Virus record (IMG/VR): IMGVR_UViG_3300029258_003221
Location: 62,001 to 126,000 of that record
DNA: 64,000 bases
Direction: 5' to 3' (one strand)
Position numbers and translations under genes: made by a program. Below the pieces are notes generated by a model, which did no database searches, had not been told where the DNA came from, and was given only the letters and a program-made list of their open reading frames with translations. Shown one piece after another: positions 2,382-59,560 of the stretch; position 1 is the first letter of the stretch, and each line of letters starts with the position of its first letter.

Positions 2382-3437
2382 ATGGCGGTCGATTATGACT
2401 CGTTTTTAAATTGGGCGACTGATCGCTTTGGGGAATCAAACATCAAATTCCGCAAAGGGGGACGAGAAATTTGCACCCACAGTTTCTTTGTAGACGGTCA
2501 TCCTGATTTTCCTGATGGTGATCACAAATTTAAACTCTGGATGAATCCAGACGGTGGGAAAAACGAGCTTGAAGGAGGAGCTTACCGTTGTTGGTATACA
2601 GATCATATGGGATCATTGATTTCCCTTGTCAGCATTGTTGATAAAGTTCCATATGATGTTGCGGCAGATATTATCTGTGACGAAATTCCCCTTCGAGCTT
2701 TGGAAAAAAAAGTTCATGATTTTTACAGCGTCAAACAAGATGATCCTCAAGAAACCATAGAAGAAATTAAACAAGAGCTGGAATTCCCACCAGACACATA
2801 TAAAATCGAAGAAGTTCGAGGTCATTGGATGGGAGCACGTGCGTTAGAATATCTTGCCAGTCGAAAAATTCCATCTCAGGGATTTTATGTTTGTATTGAC
2901 GGTGATTACAGAAATCGCCTTGTCATTCCATATTACAACAAAGCAGGTGAATTGTTTTATTACAATTGCCGAACATTAGATAAGAACCCAAAAACCTTGA
3001 GGTATATGAAGCCACCTCCTGAAGATGCAGATCAGGAAAATGTTCTTTATTTCCCTGAATGGCCTGCGGCAGGAAGCAAAATTTATATCACAGAAGGTGA
3101 ATTTGATGCTTTCACTTTATGGTTGTCTGGCTTTTATGGCGTTGCCTGTGGCGGAAAATTTCTTTCATCATCACAAATTGAAATGATTCGTGATTACAAA
3201 GTAGTTTTAGCATTTGATAGCGATGATGCAGGTGAACAGGCTTTGTTGAATATTGGTGAAACTTTGTTGGCTGATGGCTTTCAGGACATGCAGTATGTTA
3301 GACCACCTAAAGTTTTCAAAGACTGGAATAAGCTTTTAGAGCAAAGAAATATCGATACCCTAAAAGCTTATATCCAGCGTTTTGAAAAACCGTACAATAG
3401 TTGGACGGTCAATTCGTTGACTGCCAAAAGGCTTTAG
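2382..3437 (+). CDS. DNA primase (TOPRIM; DnaG/T4 gp61-like)
   Basis: YRNRLVIP, YITEGEFDA, FDSDDAG and KDWN motifs; GAGGA RBS before ATG2382. Confidence 0.9.
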   Translation: MAVDYDSFLNWATDRFGESNIKFRKGGREICTHSFFVDGHPDFPDGDHKFKLWMNPDGGKNELEGGAYRCWYTDHMGSLISLVSIVDKVPYDVAADIICDEIPLRALEKKVHDFYSVKQDDPQETIEEIKQELEFPPDTYKIEEVRGHWMGARALEYLASRKIPSQGFYVCIDGDYRNRLVIPYYNKAGELFYYNCRTLDKNPKTLRYMKPPPEDADQENVLYFPEWPAAGSKIYITEGEFDAFTLWLSGFYGVACGGKFLSSSQIEMIRDYKVVLAFDSDDAGEQALLNIGETLLADGFQDMQYVRPPKVFKDWNKLLEQRNIDTLKAYIQRFEKPYNSWTVNSLTAKRL

Positions 3438-50463: not shown

Positions 50464-53460
50464 ATGGAACCCGGATACTACCGATACATCAAACCTCTCA
50501 ATGAGCTAGAAGAAGATGGCTGTGAAATTGGGCAACTTTGGTATTTGCTCAATGTTTATGGGGATGTTGTGGAAGCAGTCCGTGGCTCTTCAACATGGGA
50601 ATTCAATTTTGAAGACTTTGAGGATTGCTTTGAATTCGCCCCAGAAGGACTCATGGAACGACAAAATGAGTTCGTGCAGGCCACAAACGAAATGCATCAG
50701 ATCGGCAGCAAAGCCGATACACTACGCATTGCCACAAGCCATGTTCCGGCTATCGAAATGCATTCTGAAAAACCTGAAGATGTTGAGTTTTCAACTGAAA
50801 CTCAGGAACCTATTGATCCCGGCACGGAAATCTCAGTGCCTAATACAAAAGATCTTGCAACCGTAAAGACAAACATCAAACGGTCAAAGTCTCTTGCCGC
50901 CAGAGTAAAAAAGCAAGTTGCCAAAAAACAAACCGCCCTCAAAGAGTTCATGGAAGAACAGGCGATTATTCTTAGAGCTAAGACTCATGCTCTGTCTAAG
51001 GTCGTAAAACAAGCTGAACAAGCCATCTACGTCCTCAATGCCTATCTGGGACAGGATGAAGAGATTATTCAGATTGCTGATGGCGAGCCTGCACCTGCTG
51101 ATACAAAAATTGTAATGCGGCAGCTTGTTCTGTTTATGGATGAAGAATGTGCTGCTGCCAACAATCTTGCCAAAAGAGGTGGTATTGATTTTCAAAACAT
51201 CAATGAGTTTGGTGAATGGGTTTGTAACCCCGATCACCTCAAACAAGTCTTGCCTGAAGAAAAAGGTGTCGTTGCTATTAAGCCAAGACGCAATGAAAAG
51301 TTTTATTCAGACAACCCTTTAGAAAATCAGGCACTTAACAGAGAAAATAAATGCCTTTATATTCTGATTCGCAACGGTGAAAAATTGTTTCGAATTTACA
51401 CAACCCTTTGGCTTCAGGATGTGTTCTTCCCACGGAAAGATGAGTTTGAACATCACTTCTATGATCGTTGGGATCGTGACAAAAAGTATCGCCCCGGTTC
51501 TAAAGCTTACATGCAGGCCATGGAAGCTGTTGAGGATGACCAACGTCGTTACTATACCGTTCTAATCCTTCTTCAGGGTCTTTTGGATCGAACTAAAGTC
51601 TTTGAGCCAATTCCTGAAACGGCTGCACGAATCAATCTGCTCAACCTTCATGAGTCAGAAAAACATGTGACGTTTCTGTATGATGCAGAGATGATCCTTG
51701 GTGATGGTCGCCCTTCATACTCAGATTGGCACGAAGAAGCCAATTCAACTATTGATATTGGTTGTCGGGTCATCCTTGAAGATGCACCTTATCCAAGTGA
51801 ACACGACCGCAAAAGAATATATCCGAAATACGCACGCCGACCAGACCTTCTGGCCCTTCATAGAATTGAAAAAAGAGATGATGAAGAAGGGTGGTTCAAA
51901 TTCTATTACTCCCGAGAAGGAGAAACTGTGTATCATGGTTGGGGTGATTTCGAAGGGCAACCTGCTAAAAACAGAGCTAGTTATCTTATAGATGTCAATG
52001 ACCCATTTGTGCTCAATTTTGATGCTGTGACTATTGAGGAAATGGAATACTACCTCAATAGTCGCCTGCACCGACATGAGTATGAAAACATGGTGCCCTT
52101 GATGAAAAGGGCCATTGAACTCAAGAAAGAAGAAGCCAAAGCTGAAGCTCCGTTTTGTCAGTTGCTTATTGGCGAAATTATCAAGAAACATAAAGTTTCT
52201 ATTGATGAAGCAGAGACCAGAATCGATGAACTCATCAAATGGTGGAAGTTCAAGAATCGTAACCACCGAGCACTCAGTGAAGATGATGCCAAGGCAATCC
52301 GTATGATTGTCTCCGAATTCGGAAAAAGACAAAAGTTAGACGAAGCCAGTGACCGTTTACAGAAACTGCACGACGATATTGTTGAACAACTTCGGGACAG
52401 TGAACCAAACTCTCTTTCGATCTGGCACAAAAAAGACAATCAGTATGCTGTCTATCTTTGGCACAATGACCGCAATGTCTTTGTGACTGAGGAGATTTGG
52501 GAACTCAAAAAACATCAACTTTCATGTGTCTCACAGAAAGAGTGGAAAGTCGTTGATGCTCGACATGAAGGGTGGAATTGCCTTTGGAAGCATGATCGAT
52601 GGGATGAATGGGAAATTGGTGCCCTTGCCAATGACCATCTCACCGATCCTGAATTGGTTGAAGCATTCGACTTTGGACTGAAGGCTGTTGCAGACCTCCA
52701 GTTTTATGAAAACAACAGAGACAAGAAAGGTCGTCTCTGGCGTGTACCGCTTTGTGCCATGTTGAACACATCAGGCAATGTCAAAATCTATTTCCTGAAA
52801 CGACATGCTTATATCCCCAAAAAGAACATTCTTTCAGACAGCGCCAATACTGCAAGCATTGGTATGCTTCAAGTCAATTGGGAAAAGAAACGAACTGGCG
52901 TTACTCATCGAATCAAAAACCAGAGTAACCATGTAATTGAATGGGGAAATTTGCCTTGGTCAGAAGATTTCGATGATCGGTATCGTCGTGGTGAACCTCT
53001 GTATGTTCACAAAGTCTATGAAAAGAACATCGAAAAAGCCAGAGCCGAAAATGAAAAGGTGATGGAGTTTCGCCGTGAAGTTAGGAAACTCACAGAACCA
53101 CTGAGAAACCTTAATTCTCAGGTGCGTGAAGCTATGATTGAAGTGTTTTACAGAGAAGAGAAGGAAAAGTTTGACGAACAATACTTTGATGAAGATGGTG
53201 ATCTCTGGGAAGATCATAAAGAAGAACTCAAGAAACCTGAATACCCCAGATGGGTAAATGATGCGGCTGCTCTTCTTGTGGAGCGTAACATTGATGTCAA
53301 TGGTATGTCTCTTGAAGAAATGGTTTCAAAAGCCAAAAAGTTTGAATTTGAGTTTAGATCTGATTTCGAGGAAGACTGGTTTAATAAAGTCAAAGATTTT
53401 GTTTTGGAGGTTAATCCTGTTGACATCGACGACGATGATGACTTCGATGAAGATTGGTAA
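50464..53460 (+). CDS. 998-aa hypothetical protein (coiled coils, acidic C-terminus)
   Basis: Long ORF with AAGGA RBS; no recognised catalytic motif. Confidence 0.8.
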   Translation: MEPGYYRYIKPLNELEEDGCEIGQLWYLLNVYGDVVEAVRGSSTWEFNFEDFEDCFEFAPEGLMERQNEFVQATNEMHQIGSKADTLRIATSHVPAIEMHSEKPEDVEFSTETQEPIDPGTEISVPNTKDLATVKTNIKRSKSLAARVKKQVAKKQTALKEFMEEQAIILRAKTHALSKVVKQAEQAIYVLNAYLGQDEEIIQIADGEPAPADTKIVMRQLVLFMDEECAAANNLAKRGGIDFQNINEFGEWVCNPDHLKQVLPEEKGVVAIKPRRNEKFYSDNPLENQALNRENKCLYILIRNGEKLFRIYTTLWLQDVFFPRKDEFEHHFYDRWDRDKKYRPGSKAYMQAMEAVEDDQRRYYTVLILLQGLLDRTKVFEPIPETAARINLLNLHESEKHVTFLYDAEMILGDGRPSYSDWHEEANSTIDIGCRVILEDAPYPSEHDRKRIYPKYARRPDLLALHRIEKRDDEEGWFKFYYSREGETVYHGWGDFEGQPAKNRASYLIDVNDPFVLNFDAVTIEEMEYYLNSRLHRHEYENMVPLMKRAIELKKEEAKAEAPFCQLLIGEIIKKHKVSIDEAETRIDELIKWWKFKNRNHRALSEDDAKAIRMIVSEFGKRQKLDEASDRLQKLHDDIVEQLRDSEPNSLSIWHKKDNQYAVYLWHNDRNVFVTEEIWELKKHQLSCVSQKEWKVVDARHEGWNCLWKHDRWDEWEIGALANDHLTDPELVEAFDFGLKAVADLQFYENNRDKKGRLWRVPLCAMLNTSGNVKIYFLKRHAYIPKKNILSDSANTASIGMLQVNWEKKRTGVTHRIKNQSNHVIEWGNLPWSEDFDDRYRRGEPLYVHKVYEKNIEKARAENEKVMEFRREVRKLTEPLRNLNSQVREAMIEVFYREEKEKFDEQYFDEDGDLWEDHKEELKKPEYPRWVNDAAALLVERNIDVNGMSLEEMVSKAKKFEFEFRSDFEEDWFNKVKDFVLEVNPVDIDDDDDFDEDW

Positions 53461-53509
53461 ACTTTACGCTATTACCATGTAGATAAAATAGCTTGTAAGG
53501 AGAAAAGCT

Positions 53510-54229
53510 ATGCGAAAAGCTGCATTGTATGTTCACGGACGTGTTGTTGTCGCTGATAGTCATCTGGCAGCATTTCAAGCACTAACCATCGAAGAACGTC
53601 GTGAATACATAGTATCAGGATTTATTGATGATGAAACGGGTGAGTTCGACAGCGATCTTGCCCGTGATCATTTTTACAATAAGGAAATTTATCTTGTTAG
53701 ACATGGCGAGGTAGAAAACAAAGATGCTCCTGATCCTCCTATTACAGAAATAGGAATCGAACAAGCAGAATGTGTAGCTGAAGAATTAACAGATGTAGAT
53801 CTTTCTGGGTTTACCTGTCGCACAAGTCCTTATCTTCGTTGTCTTCAAACAGCACAGGTTTTCTCAAGAATTTGCAATCTTGAATTTACGGTTGATCTTT
53901 CTTTGATGGAAACTCCTATGTTCCTTTCAAATAATCAATCTTTCAGATTGAAGAATCGCCACAAAGAATTCCCTCAGTTCAATTGGCCCACTAACCATGA
54001 TTGGCTGATTCCTTTTGAGGGAAAAAACAAATTCGCTGTTCGTGTCAAAAACGTATTGCAGGATTTGCCTATCCATAGCATTCTAATATCACATTTTGGC
54101 GTAATCACAAATATGGCCAGCATGGCTTTGTGTGACGAAAAGGCAATGGAATATGGCGTTCCAACTGCATCTCTCACACACATAGACAATCAAGAAGTTA
54201 AATGTCTGGGTTGGACTTGCAAAAATTGA
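53510..54229 (+). CDS. histidine phosphatase family protein
   Basis: YLVRHGE, TSPYLRCLQTA, ISHFGVI. Confidence 0.88.
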   Translation: MRKAALYVHGRVVVADSHLAAFQALTIEERREYIVSGFIDDETGEFDSDLARDHFYNKEIYLVRHGEVENKDAPDPPITEIGIEQAECVAEELTDVDLSGFTCRTSPYLRCLQTAQVFSRICNLEFTVDLSLMETPMFLSNNQSFRLKNRHKEFPQFNWPTNHDWLIPFEGKNKFAVRVKNVLQDLPIHSILISHFGVITNMASMALCDEKAMEYGVPTASLTHIDNQEVKCLGWTCKN

Positions 54230-54236
54230 GATGCAG

Positions 54237-54265
54237 TTGACTTTTACCTCAAAATTTTTTACTCT
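54237..54265 (+). promoter_or_regulatory. sigma70-type promoter
   Basis: TTGACT-17 nt-TACTCT. Confidence 0.6.
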
Positions 54266-54271
54266 GTTGTC

Positions 54272-54399
54272 AATGAGTGGCCGGTGGTGAAAAACCCTGA
54301 TCCAGCTCGCAGTGGGGAAGGTCCACAACGAATACCGGGACGGGCGAGTACGAGCATCAATAACATACGTTGTTGGGGTGCTGGGTCAATTTACTCATT
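54272..54399 (+). ncRNA. candidate structured RNA or 5' leader, family not recognised
   Basis: GC-rich island with nested helices and a possible pseudoknot, starting at the predicted TSS. Confidence 0.5.
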
Positions 54400-54423
54400 T
54401 TCAATTACTTTATGGATGGTGAC

Positions 54424-54714
54424 ATGAACGACACAAACAGCCTGATAGGAATGATTCCTTTTTTGATCATCATTGGATTGATGCTCATTTTAGTCTTCAA
54501 AAAAACTTCAGATTATCTTCGTGAAAGAAAATCACGAAATACATTTTTGAAACACTACAAAGAATCAGGCGGCTTGCCTTACATCAGCAAAATAAGATGG
54601 AGCAACAAAGAAGACACTGAATCTTCTTGGGAAGACCGACAACAAAAAAACGAGAATTGTCGCAACACAGCAAGATATAAAACAAAGTCTGAAATTGGCT
54701 ATTGTTATGAGTAA
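54424..54714 (+). CDS. small membrane protein
   Basis: N-terminal transmembrane helix. Confidence 0.6.
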   Translation: MNDTNSLIGMIPFLIIIGLMLILVFKKTSDYLRERKSRNTFLKHYKESGGLPYISKIRWSNKEDTESSWEDRQQKNENCRNTARYKTKSEIGYCYE

Positions 54715-55018
54715 AAAACAATTCTACGACCCTCATCCGGGACTTCTTGGTTGCATTGAACCTCTCCCTGAAGCCGTTAGACTCAAAGCAGCAGATATGG
54801 ATGGCAATTTCTTCACTGTCGATGAAGCAATTGCCATGATCAAAGAAGTCGCACCTGAAGATTATGAAGTCAAAGCACATGACAGCTTCATATCTCTGAG
54901 TGGTGGTGAATTCATTGATGTGCCAACAAAGCCGCCAATGCAAACAAGATCATTCAATTGGCGTGTTTTGCGATTTCGTGAAGTTGAATCCAAAAATTGT
55001 TCTGGAGATGAAAAATGA
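54707..55018 (+). CDS. hypothetical protein
   Basis: Operonic ORF. Confidence 0.65.
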   Translation: MSKKQFYDPHPGLLGCIEPLPEAVRLKAADMDGNFFTVDEAIAMIKEVAPEDYEVKAHDSFISLSGGEFIDVPTKPPMQTRSFNWRVLRFREVESKNCSGDEK

Positions 55019-55389
55019 AACGTCGAGAGGCATTGAAGATCATAGGTGCCACTGTCGTTGTCAGCAATTTTTTGCCTGAAGTTCAAGGTTCACAAGAAAA
55101 ACCTTTGAGCCCTTTAAGGCCCATAATGATGCATATTGATCGTGACAGGTCATGGAGAATTCATGGTGAATATCATATGGCATCAATTGGACCTAGCCCT
55201 CGATCTGATTGTTTAGAATCTCTCAAAATCATTACCAATGATGGAAGAACCTTTGAGTTTCATACCAAAGATACAGATGGGTTTAGTTTCCGAGAATCAG
55301 TTGATGATGGATTACTGAAGCTCAATTATATTGATACCGGTCATTTCTCTGTCATGATCATTCCAAGATACAGATGGAAGCAACTATGA
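55015..55389 (+). CDS. protein with twin-arginine (Tat)-like leader
   Basis: MKRREALKIIGATVV. Confidence 0.6.
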   Translation: MKRREALKIIGATVVVSNFLPEVQGSQEKPLSPLRPIMMHIDRDRSWRIHGEYHMASIGPSPRSDCLESLKIITNDGRTFEFHTKDTDGFSFRESVDDGLLKLNYIDTGHFSVMIIPRYRWKQL

Positions 55390-55772
55390 ATAACAAACAG
55401 AAACAAAATTGGTCTAATCTAACGAATGATTGGAAGAATCAAAACGTCCGAAGCTCTTGGCAACACAGGAAAAACCGACCAATTGAGCCCATACCAATGA
55501 GCTTCTTCTATTGGTTCTTTGGACTGATTTTCTTTTTCATTATCTTGTCTGCATTAAGCTCTGCTTTCCCTTTGATTGCGGGCATTGTGTTTGCAACAGG
55601 CATTGGATTAACTTTTATTATCCTGCCAACCATGATGTTTTTTGGTTACATGCAGGAAAGAAGAGAAAATAAATTGTGGGTGCCGTGCAGCATCATAACC
55701 ATCATGGATTTATCTTCCTTTGTCTGGAAGAAAAAATGGCATGATGACAACGAGATAGGCCCTACCAAATAA
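55386..55772 (+). CDS. membrane protein (2 TM)
   Basis: Two hydrophobic segments. Confidence 0.65.
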   Translation: MNNKQKQNWSNLTNDWKNQNVRSSWQHRKNRPIEPIPMSFFYWFFGLIFFFIILSALSSAFPLIAGIVFATGIGLTFIILPTMMFFGYMQERRENKLWVPCSIITIMDLSSFVWKKKWHDDNEIGPTK

Positions 55773-55935
55773 CACTTGCTGTATTTGGACCATCAGCCTC
55801 TTCAATTGGAGGCTCTGTAAACTCAGTGTCGTAATCATCCTGTTGATCAAAAGCTTTTTTGCTTTGATATCCCGCAACATTAACGATTGCCATTAACACT
55901 AAAAGCAATAAAATCCAAAGATGCTTTATTTTCAC
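55762..55935 (-). CDS. small exported/membrane peptide
   Basis: AGGAGG before GTG55935; hydrophobic leader. Confidence 0.5.
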   Translation of the reverse strand: MKIKHLWILLLLVLMAIVNVAGYQSKKAFDQQDDYDTEFTEPPIEEADGPNTASVIW

Positions 55936-56015
55936 TCTCGCCTCCTTTCTTATTGGGCTAATAACCATTGATTATTTACTACTGTAGTTAGTAAATTTTT
56001 AGCCCGAGGTGAGAT

Positions 56016-56204
56016 ATGTTTGAAAAGTACACATTCCCTATCAGCACAGTCTATAATTGTCGTGTTAAAGAAGGCGGCGTTTCATGTGGAGGAAACGCCG
56101 AAAATGAAGTTATTGCCAAGAGAACTTCTGAAATTATCAACAAGGGTGTTCACGAATGGCATGCAAATGTCAAATCAAAACAACTTGTGGAAATTTCTGA
56201 CTAA
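56016..56204 (+). CDS. small hypothetical protein
   Basis: GAGGT RBS. Confidence 0.45.
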   Translation: MFEKYTFPISTVYNCRVKEGGVSCGGNAENEVIAKRTSEIINKGVHEWHANVKSKQLVEISD

Positions 56205-56287
56205 AACACTACACATTCAGCTTTACAACCAAACTTCAAAACATAAAATCAAAACTCAGTCTTTTAATTCCCAAATGGAGAGTGGCT

Positions 56288-56980
56288 ATGAGCTGGGCGC
56301 TTTTGATTGCAGCAGTTGAAGCAATTAATTGGTGGTATGTTTTGACAGTGTTGTTTGGCATAGGAGGTGCCAGTGGTATTTTACACGCATTTCACAATCA
56401 TACAAAAAGCTTACCGCCAGAAACTGACCTTGAAAAAAGTCAAGGTTGGAAGCGTGGAAAATTAGATGTAGTTGTTAGTGGAAATCAAACTCAATCAGAA
56501 ATTGATTGGGATGATTGGATGGATGCTCATTGGCATACATTCAAAGGAATGAAATACAAATACCTTAAAGGTGGCAAGCCCACAGACACAAGACAAATAC
56601 ACGTCAACCCACACGCTATTCGCACAAATGCAATTCACGGAACTGACTATCCAACAATTATCGTTGTAGAAAATGGAGTTGAATCTCAATACCACGCAGT
56701 CAAATGTCACGGTTCATCACAAATGACATATCACAGTGATCCTGATGTTAAAGCAAATGTTTACATGGAAACACTTGAGGATATCTCTGTGTACAGAAAT
56801 CCTAATTCTCCACAATTTCACCCTCGTCATCCAATGAATTCCGGCTCATTGACAAAGTCCACCAAAATATTTCTCGAAGCTGTATTTGTGAGCCCTGTAA
56901 AAAGAGTTTTGGCTGGATTTGGATTTGTTGCCAGAAAAACGCCACTGCTTTCTTGCGTAATTTATGGCGAACAACATTGA
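56288..56980 (+). CDS. membrane-anchored hypothetical protein
   Basis: GGAG RBS, N-terminal transmembrane helix. Confidence 0.65.
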   Translation: MSWALLIAAVEAINWWYVLTVLFGIGGASGILHAFHNHTKSLPPETDLEKSQGWKRGKLDVVVSGNQTQSEIDWDDWMDAHWHTFKGMKYKYLKGGKPTDTRQIHVNPHAIRTNAIHGTDYPTIIVVENGVESQYHAVKCHGSSQMTYHSDPDVKANVYMETLEDISVYRNPNSPQFHPRHPMNSGSLTKSTKIFLEAVFVSPVKRVLAGFGFVARKTPLLSCVIYGEQH

Positions 56981-57043
56981 TCCGCAAAACAACATTGCTC
57001 GTTCTAAAGAGTATTCTGAATTGCTTTTGAACGGAGAAATAAA

Positions 57044-57370
57044 ATGCCAAGAGACGTTGAATTTGAAGTAAATTCCAAATTCTCAGAAGAATTCATCATG
57101 CACCGACTCGCACAAATTGTGCGTGGTCGAGCAAATCGTCACTTCGACGAAAATTTCAATGAGAAGAAGGAAGAAGACCAGAGCAACAGCGATGTGCCTT
57201 GGAAAAAAGAAAACGATTCTTGGCAGCTTGATCATGGCAATGATTGGTTTGGCCTCCGGTTGGAAGTTGGCGGCGGCATTCTGAAAAAGAAAGCAAGATA
57301 CCGCTTGTCACATCGATATAATGCACCTGTTGAAGGTCTCAAAGAGTTTCTCGAATACATGTTCGATTGA
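57044..57370 (+). CDS. hypothetical protein
   Basis: GGAG RBS; followed by a terminator. Confidence 0.7.
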   Translation: MPRDVEFEVNSKFSEEFIMHRLAQIVRGRANRHFDENFNEKKEEDQSNSDVPWKKENDSWQLDHGNDWFGLRLEVGGGILKKKARYRLSHRYNAPVEGLKEFLEYMFD

Positions 57371-57371
57371 C

Positions 57372-57407
57372 AAAAAACCAGTCTCAAAAACTGAGACTGG
57401 TTTTTTT
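57372..57407 (+). terminator. intrinsic terminator
   Basis: AAAAAACCAGTCTCA/TGAGACTGGTTTTTTT. Confidence 0.85.
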
Positions 57408-57438
57408 GTTTACACACTACATCATATTGGAGAATATC

Positions 57439-58002
57439 ATGAGACTAGATCATATCGCTTTTCGTGTCAGCGACAGGCAAAAAGCTGCACAATTCTGGAT
57501 TGATGCTTTCGGATATAAAGTTCAAACCACATTTAAACCTAAATTTCCCGATGGAACTTCGCAAGGTGTAAAATGCATTGCCTTAGAACCACCAGAAAAA
57601 ATTGAAAATGCTCCATGGGATCATGTTATGCTTCCTGACAGAGACCTCATTGGAGTTCAGGAAGTTACTGAATATCACATGGCCCCTGAAATTTTCATCT
57701 CTGATGGTCCACCTGAATCCATTGTTGGCAAATGGGTTGCTGAACGTAATGGAACAGGTGGTATTCATCACATGGCTTACCAAGTTGATGATGTTCAGAA
57801 AACAATGGATTTGTGGATGGAAAAAGGGTGGGCAGAATTCCTAAGTAATAAACCACTCACCTGTCCCGGATTGACACAGGTGTTCACGAAACCAAATCAT
57901 CTTGGTGTCATCTTTGAATTTATCGAACGTGAAAAACACGGCTTCTGTGAAGACAACGTCGGGGCACTTATGGAATCAACAAAGGATATCAATGGAAGTT
58001 AA
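57439..58002 (+). CDS. VOC/glyoxalase-fold protein resembling the HPPD C-terminal domain
   Basis: LDHIA, GGIHHMAY, TQVFT, FEFIER..GF..N..AL.ES. Confidence 0.8.
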   Translation: MRLDHIAFRVSDRQKAAQFWIDAFGYKVQTTFKPKFPDGTSQGVKCIALEPPEKIENAPWDHVMLPDRDLIGVQEVTEYHMAPEIFISDGPPESIVGKWVAERNGTGGIHHMAYQVDDVQKTMDLWMEKGWAEFLSNKPLTCPGLTQVFTKPNHLGVIFEFIEREKHGFCEDNVGALMESTKDINGS

Positions 58003-58243
58003 ACAAGCAGCGACACTCGCTTTCAAAAACAGAGAAGCACTTGAAGAAGTTAATTTTTGTAGCTGTTACCAGTGTGCTAAAAAATTCACAATTGAAGACA
58101 TCAAAGAATGGACAGACGGAAATGTCACAGCCATCTGTCCGCATTGTGGAGTTGATTCTGTGTTGCCGGGAAACATAACAGATGAAACTCTTAAACAAAT
58201 GAAAGAGTATTGGTTTGGTAACGCAGATAAACAGAACGTTTAA
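57992..58243 (+). CDS. small zinc-ribbon protein
   Basis: CSCYQC...TAICPHCGVDSVL. Confidence 0.75.
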   Translation: MEVKQAATLAFKNREALEEVNFCSCYQCAKKFTIEDIKEWTDGNVTAICPHCGVDSVLPGNITDETLKQMKEYWFGNADKQNV

Positions 58244-58337
58244 GCTCAAAAGCTGAAGGGTTTCGCTTGTGATTGATTGCTATTTATGGTAAAAGAAGCG
58301 ATCAATCAATCTCAGGAGGTAAATGTTAAAAATCTGT

Positions 58338-58360
58338 GCCCGATTTGTCGGGCGTTTTTT
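58338..58360 (+). terminator. intrinsic terminator
   Basis: GCCCGA-TTTG-TCGGGC followed by TTTTTT. Confidence 0.6.
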
Positions 58361-58414
58361 ATTTGCTCTTGGAGATTTTTTTTACAAACATCAAACTGGA
58401 AAGGGATCATTCCA

Positions 58415-58795
58415 ATGAGTGACCACACAGAGCTGAAGCGACTTCAGGTTCAACTTTCAAGAGAAAGAGATAGCCTCGATTCAGTTAAAAAAGATATTAA
58501 TGAAGCCAAGCAAAAAATCTCACAACACGAAAACAGAATCAATTCACTCAAAAAGAACATATCAAGAATCACAGAGGGAGAGAAAAAAGTTATTGTCAGC
58601 GAACATGCCATTTTGAGATACTTCGAAAGAGTTCTGGGTTTTGACATTAATGACATCAAAAAATTTGTTCTCCCGGAAGATGTTCAAAAGGCAGTTATTG
58701 AACTTGGAGGAAAAGGGAGATTCCCTGTTAAAAACCAAAATGGAAAACAACACACCTTGATTATTGAAAATCATGTTGTTAAAAGTGTGACATAA
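58415..58795 (+). CDS. coiled coil plus a putative RelE/BECR-fold domain
   Basis: VSEHAILRYFER...VVKSV. Confidence 0.55.
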   Translation: MSDHTELKRLQVQLSRERDSLDSVKKDINEAKQKISQHENRINSLKKNISRITEGEKKVIVSEHAILRYFERVLGFDINDIKKFVLPEDVQKAVIELGGKGRFPVKNQNGKQHTLIIENHVVKSVT

Positions 58796-59068
58796 GTGTT
58801 CTGCAAACTATTTACAGCAATCAAAAACATGATTACAATCCCATGTGATTACCGTCACCCACAAGGGACATACTGTAAAGATGGCCAAGTCCTGATTTAC
58901 GGTGAAATGGGCGGGCGACTTCCTGAAACAATTGTCTGCCCAAAGTGTCAAGGTGAAAACTATATTCAAACTGAAAGATCAATGATCGAAGAAATGATCA
59001 AAGATCTTGAAGAAGAAAGAGATGAAATTTCAGAAGAGATTGCCCGACTGAAATCTTATCTGACCTAG
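58796..59068 (+). CDS. small zinc-finger plus coiled-coil protein
   Basis: C...C..G...CPKCQG. Confidence 0.6.
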   Translation: MFCKLFTAIKNMITIPCDYRHPQGTYCKDGQVLIYGEMGGRLPETIVCPKCQGENYIQTERSMIEEMIKDLEEERDEISEEIARLKSYLT

Positions 59069-59079
59069 AATGGATTCAA

Positions 59080-59328
59080 ATGTGTCTTGGGAATTGTTTG
59101 TGTTGGTCAGTGATTATGTGGTTTATCCACGGTGGAAAGATCATGACCACTGAGCATGAACTGGGAGAACAAGGTAGGAACATACGACATTTTGTCCTCA
59201 AAGATCGAACAGGAAAGTTGAGACACTTCAAGAGAGTGTTTGACTTCCTACCTCCACCTTTGTGTTACCTTGTCTTCATCGGGAAATTTGAAACGTCTGG
59301 GAACAAAGGCCGAAAGAGACATGTTTAA
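59080..59328 (+). CDS. hypothetical protein
   Basis: Operonic ORF. Confidence 0.55.
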   Translation: MCLGNCLCWSVIMWFIHGGKIMTTEHELGEQGRNIRHFVLKDRTGKLRHFKRVFDFLPPPLCYLVFIGKFETSGNKGRKRHV

Positions 59329-59560
59329 TCTGAAACCAACTGATCTTGTAGAAGATCGTCGAATAAAGAAGGTCTTCCCAAAAGTTGGTGACACAGAGAG
59401 ATACTCTGGTATTTTCGGTGAGGTCATTAAAGTCACCAAAACAGGATTCAGAGTTCAGTGGTTTGATGATTATGAAATGGGATACAGTTGGGGGGTTTTT
59501 GGCAATGATGCCATAGCAAAGGTTGAAGCACGAAGAAGGGCGAGTAGCTCAGTTGGTTAG
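59321..59560 (+). CDS. small SH3-like hypothetical protein whose 3' end overlaps the tRNA
   Basis: KVGD..GEVIKV..RVQW; TAG stop lies in the tRNA D-arm. Confidence 0.55.
   Translation: MFNLKPTDLVEDRRIKKVFPKVGDTERYSGIFGEVIKVTKTGFRVQWFDDYEMGYSWGVFGNDAIAKVEARRRASSSVG

What the first reader, a model, noticed from the sequence alone, without database searches (positions are those of the whole stretch)
54237..54399. Unrecognised 128-nt structured RNA starting at a predicted transcription start
Seen: TTGACT-17 nt-TACTCT predicts +1 near 54272, where AATGAGT (54272-78) pairs with ACTCATT (54393-99). Inner pairings: TGATCCAGC (54298-306)/GCTGGGTCA (54380-88), CTCGC/GCGAG, a GTGG/CCAC hairpin, an AATAAC/GTTGTT hairpin, and a crossing CCGGT (54281-85)/ACCGG (54334-38) pseudoknot. 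GCTCG/CGAGC offers an alternative pairing. The segment is GC-rich in an AT-rich genome, and I could not match it to a riboswitch or ribozyme consensus I know. Inference: a new sRNA, ribozyme or switch leading an early operon.
Basis: partly seen in the sequence, partly recalled or inferred. Interest (0 to 1): 0.68.

Follow-up and report, generated by a model that had tools for sequence, protein, structure and literature searches.

The report
Conserved structured leader RNA in huge phage
A 128-base stretch just after a promoter in an uncultivated huge phage is kept almost unchanged in a second, diverged phage, and its few changes preserve base pairs, so it is very likely a real folded RNA of a family not in Rfam, with function still unknown.

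Summary
Folding energy alone does not single the element out: z = -1.66 against shuffles, and 17% of same-GC windows in this genome fold as well. Comparison with a relative does.

A second phage lineage (type B; L055, L057-L059) carries the same 128-nt element at 93% identity. Flanking genes are 74% identical with saturated silent sites, and the other shared intergenic region is about half identical with a 69-nt indel.

All nine differences are transitions. Against a structure fixed before type B was found, none breaks a pair, two pairs changed on both sides (U-A to C-G, A-U to G-C) and two changed through G-U wobbles (simulated P about 0.001). Conservation starts and ends exactly at helix P1. 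The -35 and -10 positions and the 17-nt spacer are kept while the spacer sequence drifted.

There is no Rfam match for either type, no tRNA or tmRNA call, no second copy in the genome, and no copy in 36 related phage records. No terminator follows the element; a strong one lies 3 kb downstream.

Best reading: a new, narrowly distributed, plus-strand structured 5' leader RNA acting in cis. Riboswitch-like, protein-binding and polymerase-modifying mechanisms cannot be separated. Only two distinct sequences exist and there is no RNA data.

The parts
54237..54242 (+). -35-like hexamer TTGACT (type B has TTGATT at the same place)
   Evidence: 5 of 6 positions conserved, while the 17-nt spacer is only 7/17 identical
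54260..54265 (+). -10-like hexamer TACTCT (type B: TATCAT); T1, A2 and T6 are conserved, and it lies 6 nt before the first base of P1
   Evidence: the ~99% strain X6 differs only at 54247, 54267 and 54270, outside both hexamers
54272..54399 (+). 128-nt conserved structured RNA element (type A); 119/128 identical to type B at L057:1406-1533
54272..54280 (+). P1 5' strand, pairs with 54391-54399; invariant; conservation begins here
54391..54399 (+). P1 3' strand; conservation ends 1-2 nt after it
54281..54286 (+). Pseudoknot 5' strand (CCGGUG), pairs with 54333-54338; five pairs are invariant, and the sixth is G-U in type A and G-C in type B
   Evidence: post hoc; otherwise untested
54333..54338 (+). 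Pseudoknot 3' strand (UACCGG); 54333 is U in type A and C in type B
54298..54306 (+). P2 5' strand, pairs with 54380-54388 (9 bp, invariant). The last two pairs compete with an extended P3
54380..54388 (+). P2 3' strand
54307..54310 (+). P3 5' strand, pairs with 54344-54347. 54307/54347 is U-A in type A and C-G in type B (compensatory). A possible extension is 54305-06 with 54348-49 (G-U to G-C)
54344..54347 (+). P3 3' strand
54312..54326 (+). P3a hairpin (54312-16 with 54322-26, loop GAAGG), invariant
54358..54375 (+). P4 hairpin (54358-64 with 54369-75, loop AUAC). 54359/54374 is A-U to G-C (compensatory); 54358 is C-G to U-G; 54361 is U-G to C-G
54412..54714 (+). First ORF after the element in type A: a small protein with one membrane helix, with ATG at 54412 or 54424. 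It is absent from type B
   Evidence: no Pfam or PHROG match
54710..55018 (+). ORF of 102 aa. Its 98-aa homolog (75-79% aa identity) starts 14 nt after the element in type B. It belongs to a wide family with no Pfam match (291 representatives)
55374..55772 (+). Membrane-protein ORF shared with type B (37% aa identity)
57369..57410 (+). Strong intrinsic terminator hairpin with a U-run; the likely end of the ~3.1-kb transcription unit that the element heads
   Evidence: z = -7.4 for the 128-nt window

Best explanation
A new, narrowly distributed structured RNA domain forms the 5' end of a transcript started by a sigma-70-type promoter at about 54272.

Fold: terminal helix P1 closes a junction of P2, P3 (with hairpin P3a) and P4, and the long P1-P2 joiner probably forms a pseudoknot with the loop inside P3.

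Most likely it acts in cis as a leader of the downstream small-protein operon (54412 to the terminator at about 57400). It would sense a ligand or factor, or act on the transcribing polymerase or the ribosome, to set expression of the genes behind it.

Shown:
- sequence conservation far above that of the flanks;
- pair-preserving substitutions;
- plus-strand specificity;
- a conserved promoter position;
- no terminator directly behind the element.

Inferred: transcription from this promoter, action in cis, and the regulatory mechanism.
For: - Homolog in a diverged lineage found and aligned.
- Element identity is 119/128, against 74% nt identity in the flanking genes with 4-fold sites only 34-48% identical, and about 50% identity plus a 69-nt indel in another shared intergenic region.
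- The structure was fixed, before type B was seen. Against it: 0 broken pairs, 2 double-compensatory pairs and 2 wobble changes. Random placement of 9 transitions gives this with P about 0.0013.
- The structure contains 5 invariant G-U pairs, which would be C-A mismatches on the minus strand. The minus strand also folds worse.
- Promoter hexamer positions and spacing are conserved while the spacer drifted.
- Conservation stops at both ends of P1.
- A start codon lies 12 nt (type A) or 14 nt (type B) after P1.
- No terminator follows the element, but the phage does use a canonical one 3 kb downstream.
- No match to 4227 Rfam families.
Against: - Only two distinct sequences exist, so P1, P2, P3a and the pseudoknot never vary and are untested.
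- No RNA-seq run holds the phage, so neither the transcript nor its ends have been seen.
- MFE is ordinary for the element's GC content.
- No conserved expression platform: the sequence after P1 and the first downstream gene differ between the two lineages.
- The downstream genes are unknown small proteins, not metabolic genes.
- Read-through from the upstream gene is possible, so the RNA need not start at P1.
- High identity could partly reflect recent exchange between the two phages.
Confidence: 0.45

Rival explanations
1. A stand-alone stable small RNA (trans-acting regulator, RNP component or decoy). Its paired 5' and 3' ends in P1 would protect it, and it would be released from the longer transcript by processing.
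For: - The promoter places +1 at the first base of P1, and conservation is bounded exactly by P1.
- The function appears independent of what follows, because the downstream gene differs between lineages.
- Nearly every nucleotide is constrained, as in RNAs with tertiary folds or protein partners.
Against: - No intrinsic terminator after P1, although the phage has a canonical one at 57369-57410.
- No RNA data.
- No target or partner identified.
Confidence: 0.27
2. A self-cleaving ribozyme that processes the operon transcript.
For: It is a compact multi-helix fold with a possible pseudoknot and highly conserved unpaired nucleotides. Such ribozymes occur in phage and metagenome DNA (general knowledge).
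Against: - No match to any Rfam ribozyme family, even at E<=10.
- A dedicated promoter right at P1 is not expected for a processing ribozyme.
Confidence: 0.06
3. Not a functional RNA. The segment was recently exchanged between the two phages, or is a small mobile DNA element with terminal inverted repeats, and its identity simply reflects youth.
For: - It sits at the edge of a hyperplastic island.
- It has 8-9-bp terminal inverted repeats.
- It is absent from the other relatives.
- Its GC content is above the genome mean.
Against: - A single copy per genome.
- The upstream promoter context is homologous in both lineages, so these are not independent insertions.
- Nine substitutions did accumulate, and all keep pairing.
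Confidence: 0.1
4. A small protein-coding gene. The frame of the upstream gene stays open for 66 codons after its TGA stop, and a GTG ORF runs from 54284 to 54427.
For: An open frame exists in both lineages, and the pseudo-protein is 80% identical.
Against: - The substitutions fall at codon positions 1, 2 and 3 as 4, 1 and 4, giving 5 amino-acid changes in 42 codons.
- Silent-site divergence would be far below the saturated neighbours.
- The C-terminal parts differ completely.
- No Shine-Dalgarno sequence.
- No gene was called there in any of the contigs.
Confidence: 0.04

Closest known systems
Riboswitch aptamers and 'orphan' riboswitch candidates (5'-UTR multi-helix junctions closed by P1, often with a pseudoknot)
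   Same: - Size of about 130 nt, with P1 closing a junction.
- Very conserved unpaired nucleotides and a possible pseudoknot.
- Position between a promoter and a start codon 12-14 nt after P1.
- Helices that can pair in more than one way.
   Different: - No match to any Rfam riboswitch; RF00174 was tested on its own.
- No conserved terminator or Shine-Dalgarno-sequestering platform.
- Downstream genes are unknown small membrane or secreted proteins.
- Known from only two phage lineages.
Phage HK022 put RNAs and other cis-acting processive-antitermination RNAs (named from my own knowledge, not tested)
   Same: A promoter-proximal structured RNA of a phage whose action would not need any particular adjacent sequence. 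This fits the differing downstream genes, and it heads a multi-gene unit ending at a strong terminator.
   Different: put is about 70 nt with two stem-loops, whereas this element is a 128-nt junction fold. No sequence similarity is known, and no internal terminators were shown to be read through.
Autoregulatory protein-binding leaders such as the T4 gene 32 5' pseudoknot (from my own knowledge)
   Same: A structured, possibly pseudoknotted 5' end of a phage mRNA, upstream of the regulated start codon.
   Different: No RNA-binding protein has been identified. The gene directly downstream is not the same in the two lineages.
Promoter-plus-stem-loop cassettes at the borders of hyperplastic regions in T4-type phages (PeSL; from my own knowledge)
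   Same: A promoter followed by a structured segment at the edge of a variable gene island.
   Different: PeSLs are short, repeated many times per genome and act as recombination substrates. This element is single-copy, is 128 nt long, and shows selection for a complex fold.

Membership tests
Any Rfam 15 family (4227 models) | Covariance-model score at or above the family's gathering score | tested here: not met
   0 hits in the window; at E<=10 there are only noise hits of 10-18 bits (snoRNAs, D12-methyl), for both type A and type B.
Cobalamin riboswitch (RF00174) | Match to the family model. I had recalled a similar order of short motifs: GGUGAAAAACC, GCAGUG, GGGAAGG, GAAUACC | tested here: not met
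   no match at E<=10 in the whole 234-kb record, while the control genomes matched.
Riboswitch (generic) | Conserved aptamer fold supported by covariation | tested here: met
   two compensatory pairs and no broken pair, but from only two sequences.
Riboswitch (generic) | Expression platform (terminator or Shine-Dalgarno-sequestering helix) coupled to P1 | tested here: inconclusive
   No terminator follows the element, and folding with the downstream sequence gives no shared alternative structure. A start codon lies 12 or 14 nt after P1, so steric control remains possible.
Riboswitch (generic) | Specific binding of a small ligand | not testable with these tools
   Needs in-line probing or ITC.
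Terminator-made bacterial or phage sRNA | An intrinsic terminator forming the 3' end | tested here: not met
   none within 100 nt after P1. A canonical terminator exists only at 57369-57410.
tRNA / tmRNA | Cloverleaf or tmRNA fold detected by ARAGORN | tested here: not met
   none at this place.
Known self-cleaving ribozymes (hammerhead, twister, twister-sister, hatchet, pistol, HDV-like, glmS) | Match to the family model | tested here: not met
Known self-cleaving ribozymes (hammerhead, twister, twister-sister, hatchet, pistol, HDV-like, glmS) | Site-specific self-cleavage | not testable with these tools
   Needs in vitro transcription.
MITE-like mobile element or repeat | Several dispersed copies | tested here: not met
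   one copy in 234 kb; none in 36 related records.
Protein-coding gene | Substitutions concentrated at silent codon positions, with a start signal | tested here: not met
   changes fall at codon positions 1/2/3 as 4/1/4, there is no Shine-Dalgarno sequence, and the C-terminal parts differ.

The most novel reading that the evidence does not exclude
The element founds a new class of phage-borne regulatory RNA. It would be a riboswitch for an unknown ligand, or a put-like RNA that reprograms the host polymerase, carried by huge phages at the head of a fast-changing accessory-gene cassette. Its above-average GC would then hint at capture from a host.
Probability: 0.3. Interest if true: 0.75.

Novelty: new variant of a known kind. 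Interest (0 to 1): 0.5.

Why it matters
Structured RNAs of huge phages are almost unexplored. This is a compact RNA under stronger constraint than the proteins around it. It heads a gene cassette that is being rewired between close relatives: ClpP lost, a peptidase truncated, ORFs gained. It is therefore a concrete, clonable candidate for a new regulatory RNA class.

If it senses a ligand or acts on RNA polymerase, it would show how such phages control accessory genes. If it proves to be only a stabilising 5' structure, it is a modest addition to the catalogue. The case also shows that folding energy would have dismissed an element that comparison with a relative supports.

Tried and rejected
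- Rfam at gathering score and at E<=10 for both variants: nothing.
- The cobalamin riboswitch idea, from motif order recalled from memory: rejected by RF00174. Resemblances I recalled to TPP, SAM-I, THF, ykkC and 16S rRNA pieces were not backed by any Rfam hit, so I dropped them.
- Ro/Y-RNA idea: no TROVE protein in the record.
- Searches with a single-sequence covariance model found no further copy. I searched 40 related loci, L049 and L050, 36 whole related phage records, the phage's own genome, and contexts of distant ORF98 relatives. The weak hits were a gene end plus terminator or coding sequence.
- DNA pattern scans of viral contigs returned only the near-identical contig that also carries the element, plus one chance hit in a coding region. 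The genome scan gave a chance hit inside an Oceanobacillus oxidoreductase gene.
- blastn against phages and plasmids: nothing.
- Island proteins as guides: the 124-aa ORF has no relatives.
- Remnant-of-ClpP or other gene idea: six-frame comparison with all loci found nothing.
- Sequencing runs are DNA only. The ~99% strain X6 has no change in the element, which is not significant on its own.
- TAG recoding, suggested by a tRNA-CUA: TAG ends 28 of 212 long ORFs, so there is no sign of it here.
- What worked: translating the element as a pseudo-protein, so that the search for related loci scanned six degenerate patterns at once.

Full report
**Setting.** The window is bases 62001-126000 of a 234,631-bp IMG/VR virus record, judged 44% complete. 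The record is 42% GC. It carries T4-like baseplate genes and occurs in sediment and seawater metagenomes.

The finding lies in the 182-nt gap between two genes. Upstream is a histidine-phosphatase gene (53510-54229, Pfam His_Phos_1). Downstream is a small ORF with one membrane helix, starting at ATG 54412 or 54424. All neighbouring genes from 50464 to 59560 are on the plus strand.

**Observation.** The -10 hexamer, TACTCT, matches the consensus at only 3 of 6 positions, and the tool's promoter scan did not report the site.

The element is 52% GC in a 42% GC genome, and about 95 similar GC islands exist in the record. 'GC-rich in an AT-rich genome' is therefore overstated.

Thermodynamics alone is unremarkable:
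- MFE is -41.4 kcal/mol with z = -1.66, and 10 of 200 shuffles fold as well.
- The minus strand gives z = -0.5.
- In a scan of the whole record, 120 of 691 windows of similar GC fold at least as well.

**Known families.** Rfam 15 gives nothing at gathering score in the whole window. At E<=10 on the element itself, in either variant, it gives only noise. ARAGORN finds no tRNA or tmRNA here.

A resemblance in motif order to cobalamin riboswitches, which I recalled from memory, was tested with RF00174 and rejected. No TROVE/Ro protein is encoded.

**Search for relatives.**
- Near-identical copies exist in a 55.7-kb contig of the same sample.
- A ~99% strain (run X6) has no change in 54271-54443. 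It has three changes just upstream, at 54247, 54267 and 54270, all outside the promoter hexamers. This is not significant on its own.
- The conserved 998-aa neighbour has hundreds of relatives in huge phages. A covariance model of the element (R1, structure fixed) found nothing in 40 related loci, in two closer contigs, in 36 whole related records, or elsewhere in the phage's own genome.
- Comparison with the 58% relative L049 showed that window 54230-57366 is a variable island.
- DNA pattern scans and blastn found nothing real.

The successful step was to hand the element, read as a pseudo-protein, to the search for related loci. This scans several degenerate patterns at once. It returned metagenome contig Ga0180431_10025541 (L055; in full as L057) with a diverged copy. 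Two further contigs from other samples carry the same variant (L058, L059).

**The second lineage (type B).** The gene order in L057 is: histidine phosphatase, ClpP, promoter plus element (1406-1533), a 98-aa ORF starting 14 nt after the element, a membrane-protein ORF, then an M14 peptidase on the other strand.

The window keeps the element, the 98-aa ORF's homolog (54710-55018, 75-79% aa identity) and the membrane protein (37% aa). It differs in three ways:
- it has lost ClpP;
- it retains only a 60-68-aa remnant of the peptidase (55762-55968, minus strand);
- it has gained the small membrane ORF and a 124-aa ORF that has no relatives.

More distant relatives place the 84-aa homolog directly after ClpP with no gap (L063), or lack it altogether (L049). 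The promoter-element unit is therefore confined to these two lineages. The 98-aa family itself is wide (291 representatives) and has no Pfam match. It occurs without the element elsewhere.

**Evidence of selection.** Between the two lineages:
- the flanking genes are 74% identical at the nucleotide level, with 4-fold degenerate sites only 34-48% identical, so they are saturated;
- another shared intergenic region is about half identical and carries a 69-nt indel;
- the 45 nt upstream of the element are 24/45 identical;
- the element is 119/128 identical with no indel, and identity begins at the first base of P1 and ends 1-2 nt after its last base.

All nine differences are transitions. Against the structure fixed before type B was known (33 pairs):

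| Window position(s) | Helix | Type A | Type B | Kind of change |
|---|---|---|---|---|
| 54307 / 54347 | P3 | U-A | C-G | both sides (compensatory) |
| 54359 / 54374 | P4 | A-U | G-C | both sides (compensatory) |
| 54358 | P4 | C-G | U-G | one side, via wobble |
| 54361 | P4 | U-G | C-G | one side, via wobble |

No pair is broken. Random placement of nine transitions gives no broken pair together with at least two double changes in about 0.13% of trials.

A slightly adjusted fold places all nine changes in pairs that are kept, with 42 pairs 100% paired in both sequences. It uses P3 at 54305-10/54344-49, P4 extended to 54356/54379, and the pseudoknot extended by G15-U62 becoming G15-C62. This fold is post hoc and counts only as a hypothesis.

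Five invariant G-U pairs would be C-A mismatches on the other strand, so the structure belongs to the plus strand.

The open frame across the element is not a good gene. Changes fall at codon positions 1, 2 and 3 as 4, 1 and 4, the C-terminal parts differ, there is no Shine-Dalgarno sequence, and no gene was called there.

**Promoter and transcription unit.** Type B has TTGATT, 17 nt, TATCAT, then 6 nt before the same first base of P1. Type A has TTGACT, 17 nt, TACTCT, then 6 nt. The -35 hexamer (5/6) and the three key -10 positions (T1, A2, T6) are kept, while the spacer (7/17) and the six bases after the -10 (2/6) drifted. This is what a working sigma-70-type promoter would show.

No terminator follows the element. 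Folding with the downstream sequence shows no shared alternative structure. A strong canonical terminator lies at 57369-57410, right after the last island gene. The island therefore looks like one ~3.1-kb unit, bounded by this promoter-leader and that terminator.

**Interpretation.** I put about 0.8 on this being a real, selected, plus-strand structured RNA.

Its mode of action is inferred. I favour a cis-acting leader (0.45) for three reasons:
- it sits between a promoter and a start codon 12-14 nt after P1;
- it has no terminator of its own;
- it has the build of an aptamer-like domain, with a junction, a possible pseudoknot and very conserved unpaired bases.

Within that reading, riboswitch-like, protein-binding and put-like antitermination mechanisms cannot be told apart. 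The put-like mechanism would explain why the downstream sequence is free to change.

Rivals:
- A processed stand-alone small RNA is the main one (0.27), favoured by the exact coincidence of +1, the conservation limits and P1.
- Ribozyme: 0.06.
- Recently exchanged or mobile DNA without an RNA function: 0.10.
- Small protein: 0.04.

**Limits.** There are only two distinct sequences. P1, P2, P3a and the pseudoknot never vary. No RNA run holds the phage. The metagenome and genome scans were capped at one each, so absence elsewhere is weak evidence.

Noticed in passing
window 57369-57410: The best GC-adjusted fold in the whole 234-kb record: a long hairpin with A-run and U-run arms (a bidirectional-looking intrinsic terminator) right after the ORF ending at 57370; z = -7.4. 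The tool's terminator scan missed it because the U-run is absorbed into the stem.
   Followed up: partly
window 54200-54271 versus L057 1330-1405: The window lineage has lost the ClpP gene that sits between the histidine phosphatase and the element in relatives. The 3' ends of the two genes share a stretch about 19/25 identical, which may have mediated the deletion. The window's phosphatase is 11-13 aa shorter at its C-terminus.
   Followed up: partly
window 55762-55968 (minus strand): A 60-68-aa ORF with a signal-peptide-like start and a good Shine-Dalgarno sequence. It is the N-terminal remnant of the 328-aa M14 peptidase of the relatives (39% identity over 46 aa).
   Followed up: yes
G000:C1:5677-5751 (outside the window): A tRNA with anticodon CUA (amber suppressor; ARAGORN labels it Pyl). 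TAG still ends 28 of 212 long ORFs, so this fragment shows no sign of TAG recoding.
   Followed up: partly
G000:C1:134421-134560, minus strand (outside the window): ARAGORN calls a tmRNA with tag peptide DNEKRPMFRSCLG. This is unverified, and Rfam was not run on that part.
   Followed up: no
window 54227-54427: After the TGA stop of the phosphatase gene, the same frame stays open for 66 codons across the whole element. This could mislead gene callers or suggest read-through. No support for translation was found.
   Followed up: partly
window 55015-55389: A 124-aa ORF with a twin-arginine-like signal (MKRREALK...). It has no relative in 5.8 billion proteins apart from its own strain variants, and it is absent from type B.
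   Followed up: partly
window 55969-55990 and L057 ~3290-3312: A short block (about TATTTACTACT) is the only conserved piece of the otherwise diverged intergenic region upstream of the shared 62-aa ORF. It may be a phage promoter motif; TTTACT also occurs at the element's -10 in type A.
   Followed up: no
window 54710-55018; proteins P0122-P0272: The 98-102-aa protein behind the element belongs to a wide family with no Pfam match (FYDPHPG ... WRVLRFR; 291 representative clusters). The family includes multi-repeat giants (one of 2639 aa with 8 copies) and one fusion to a YunG domain.
   Followed up: partly
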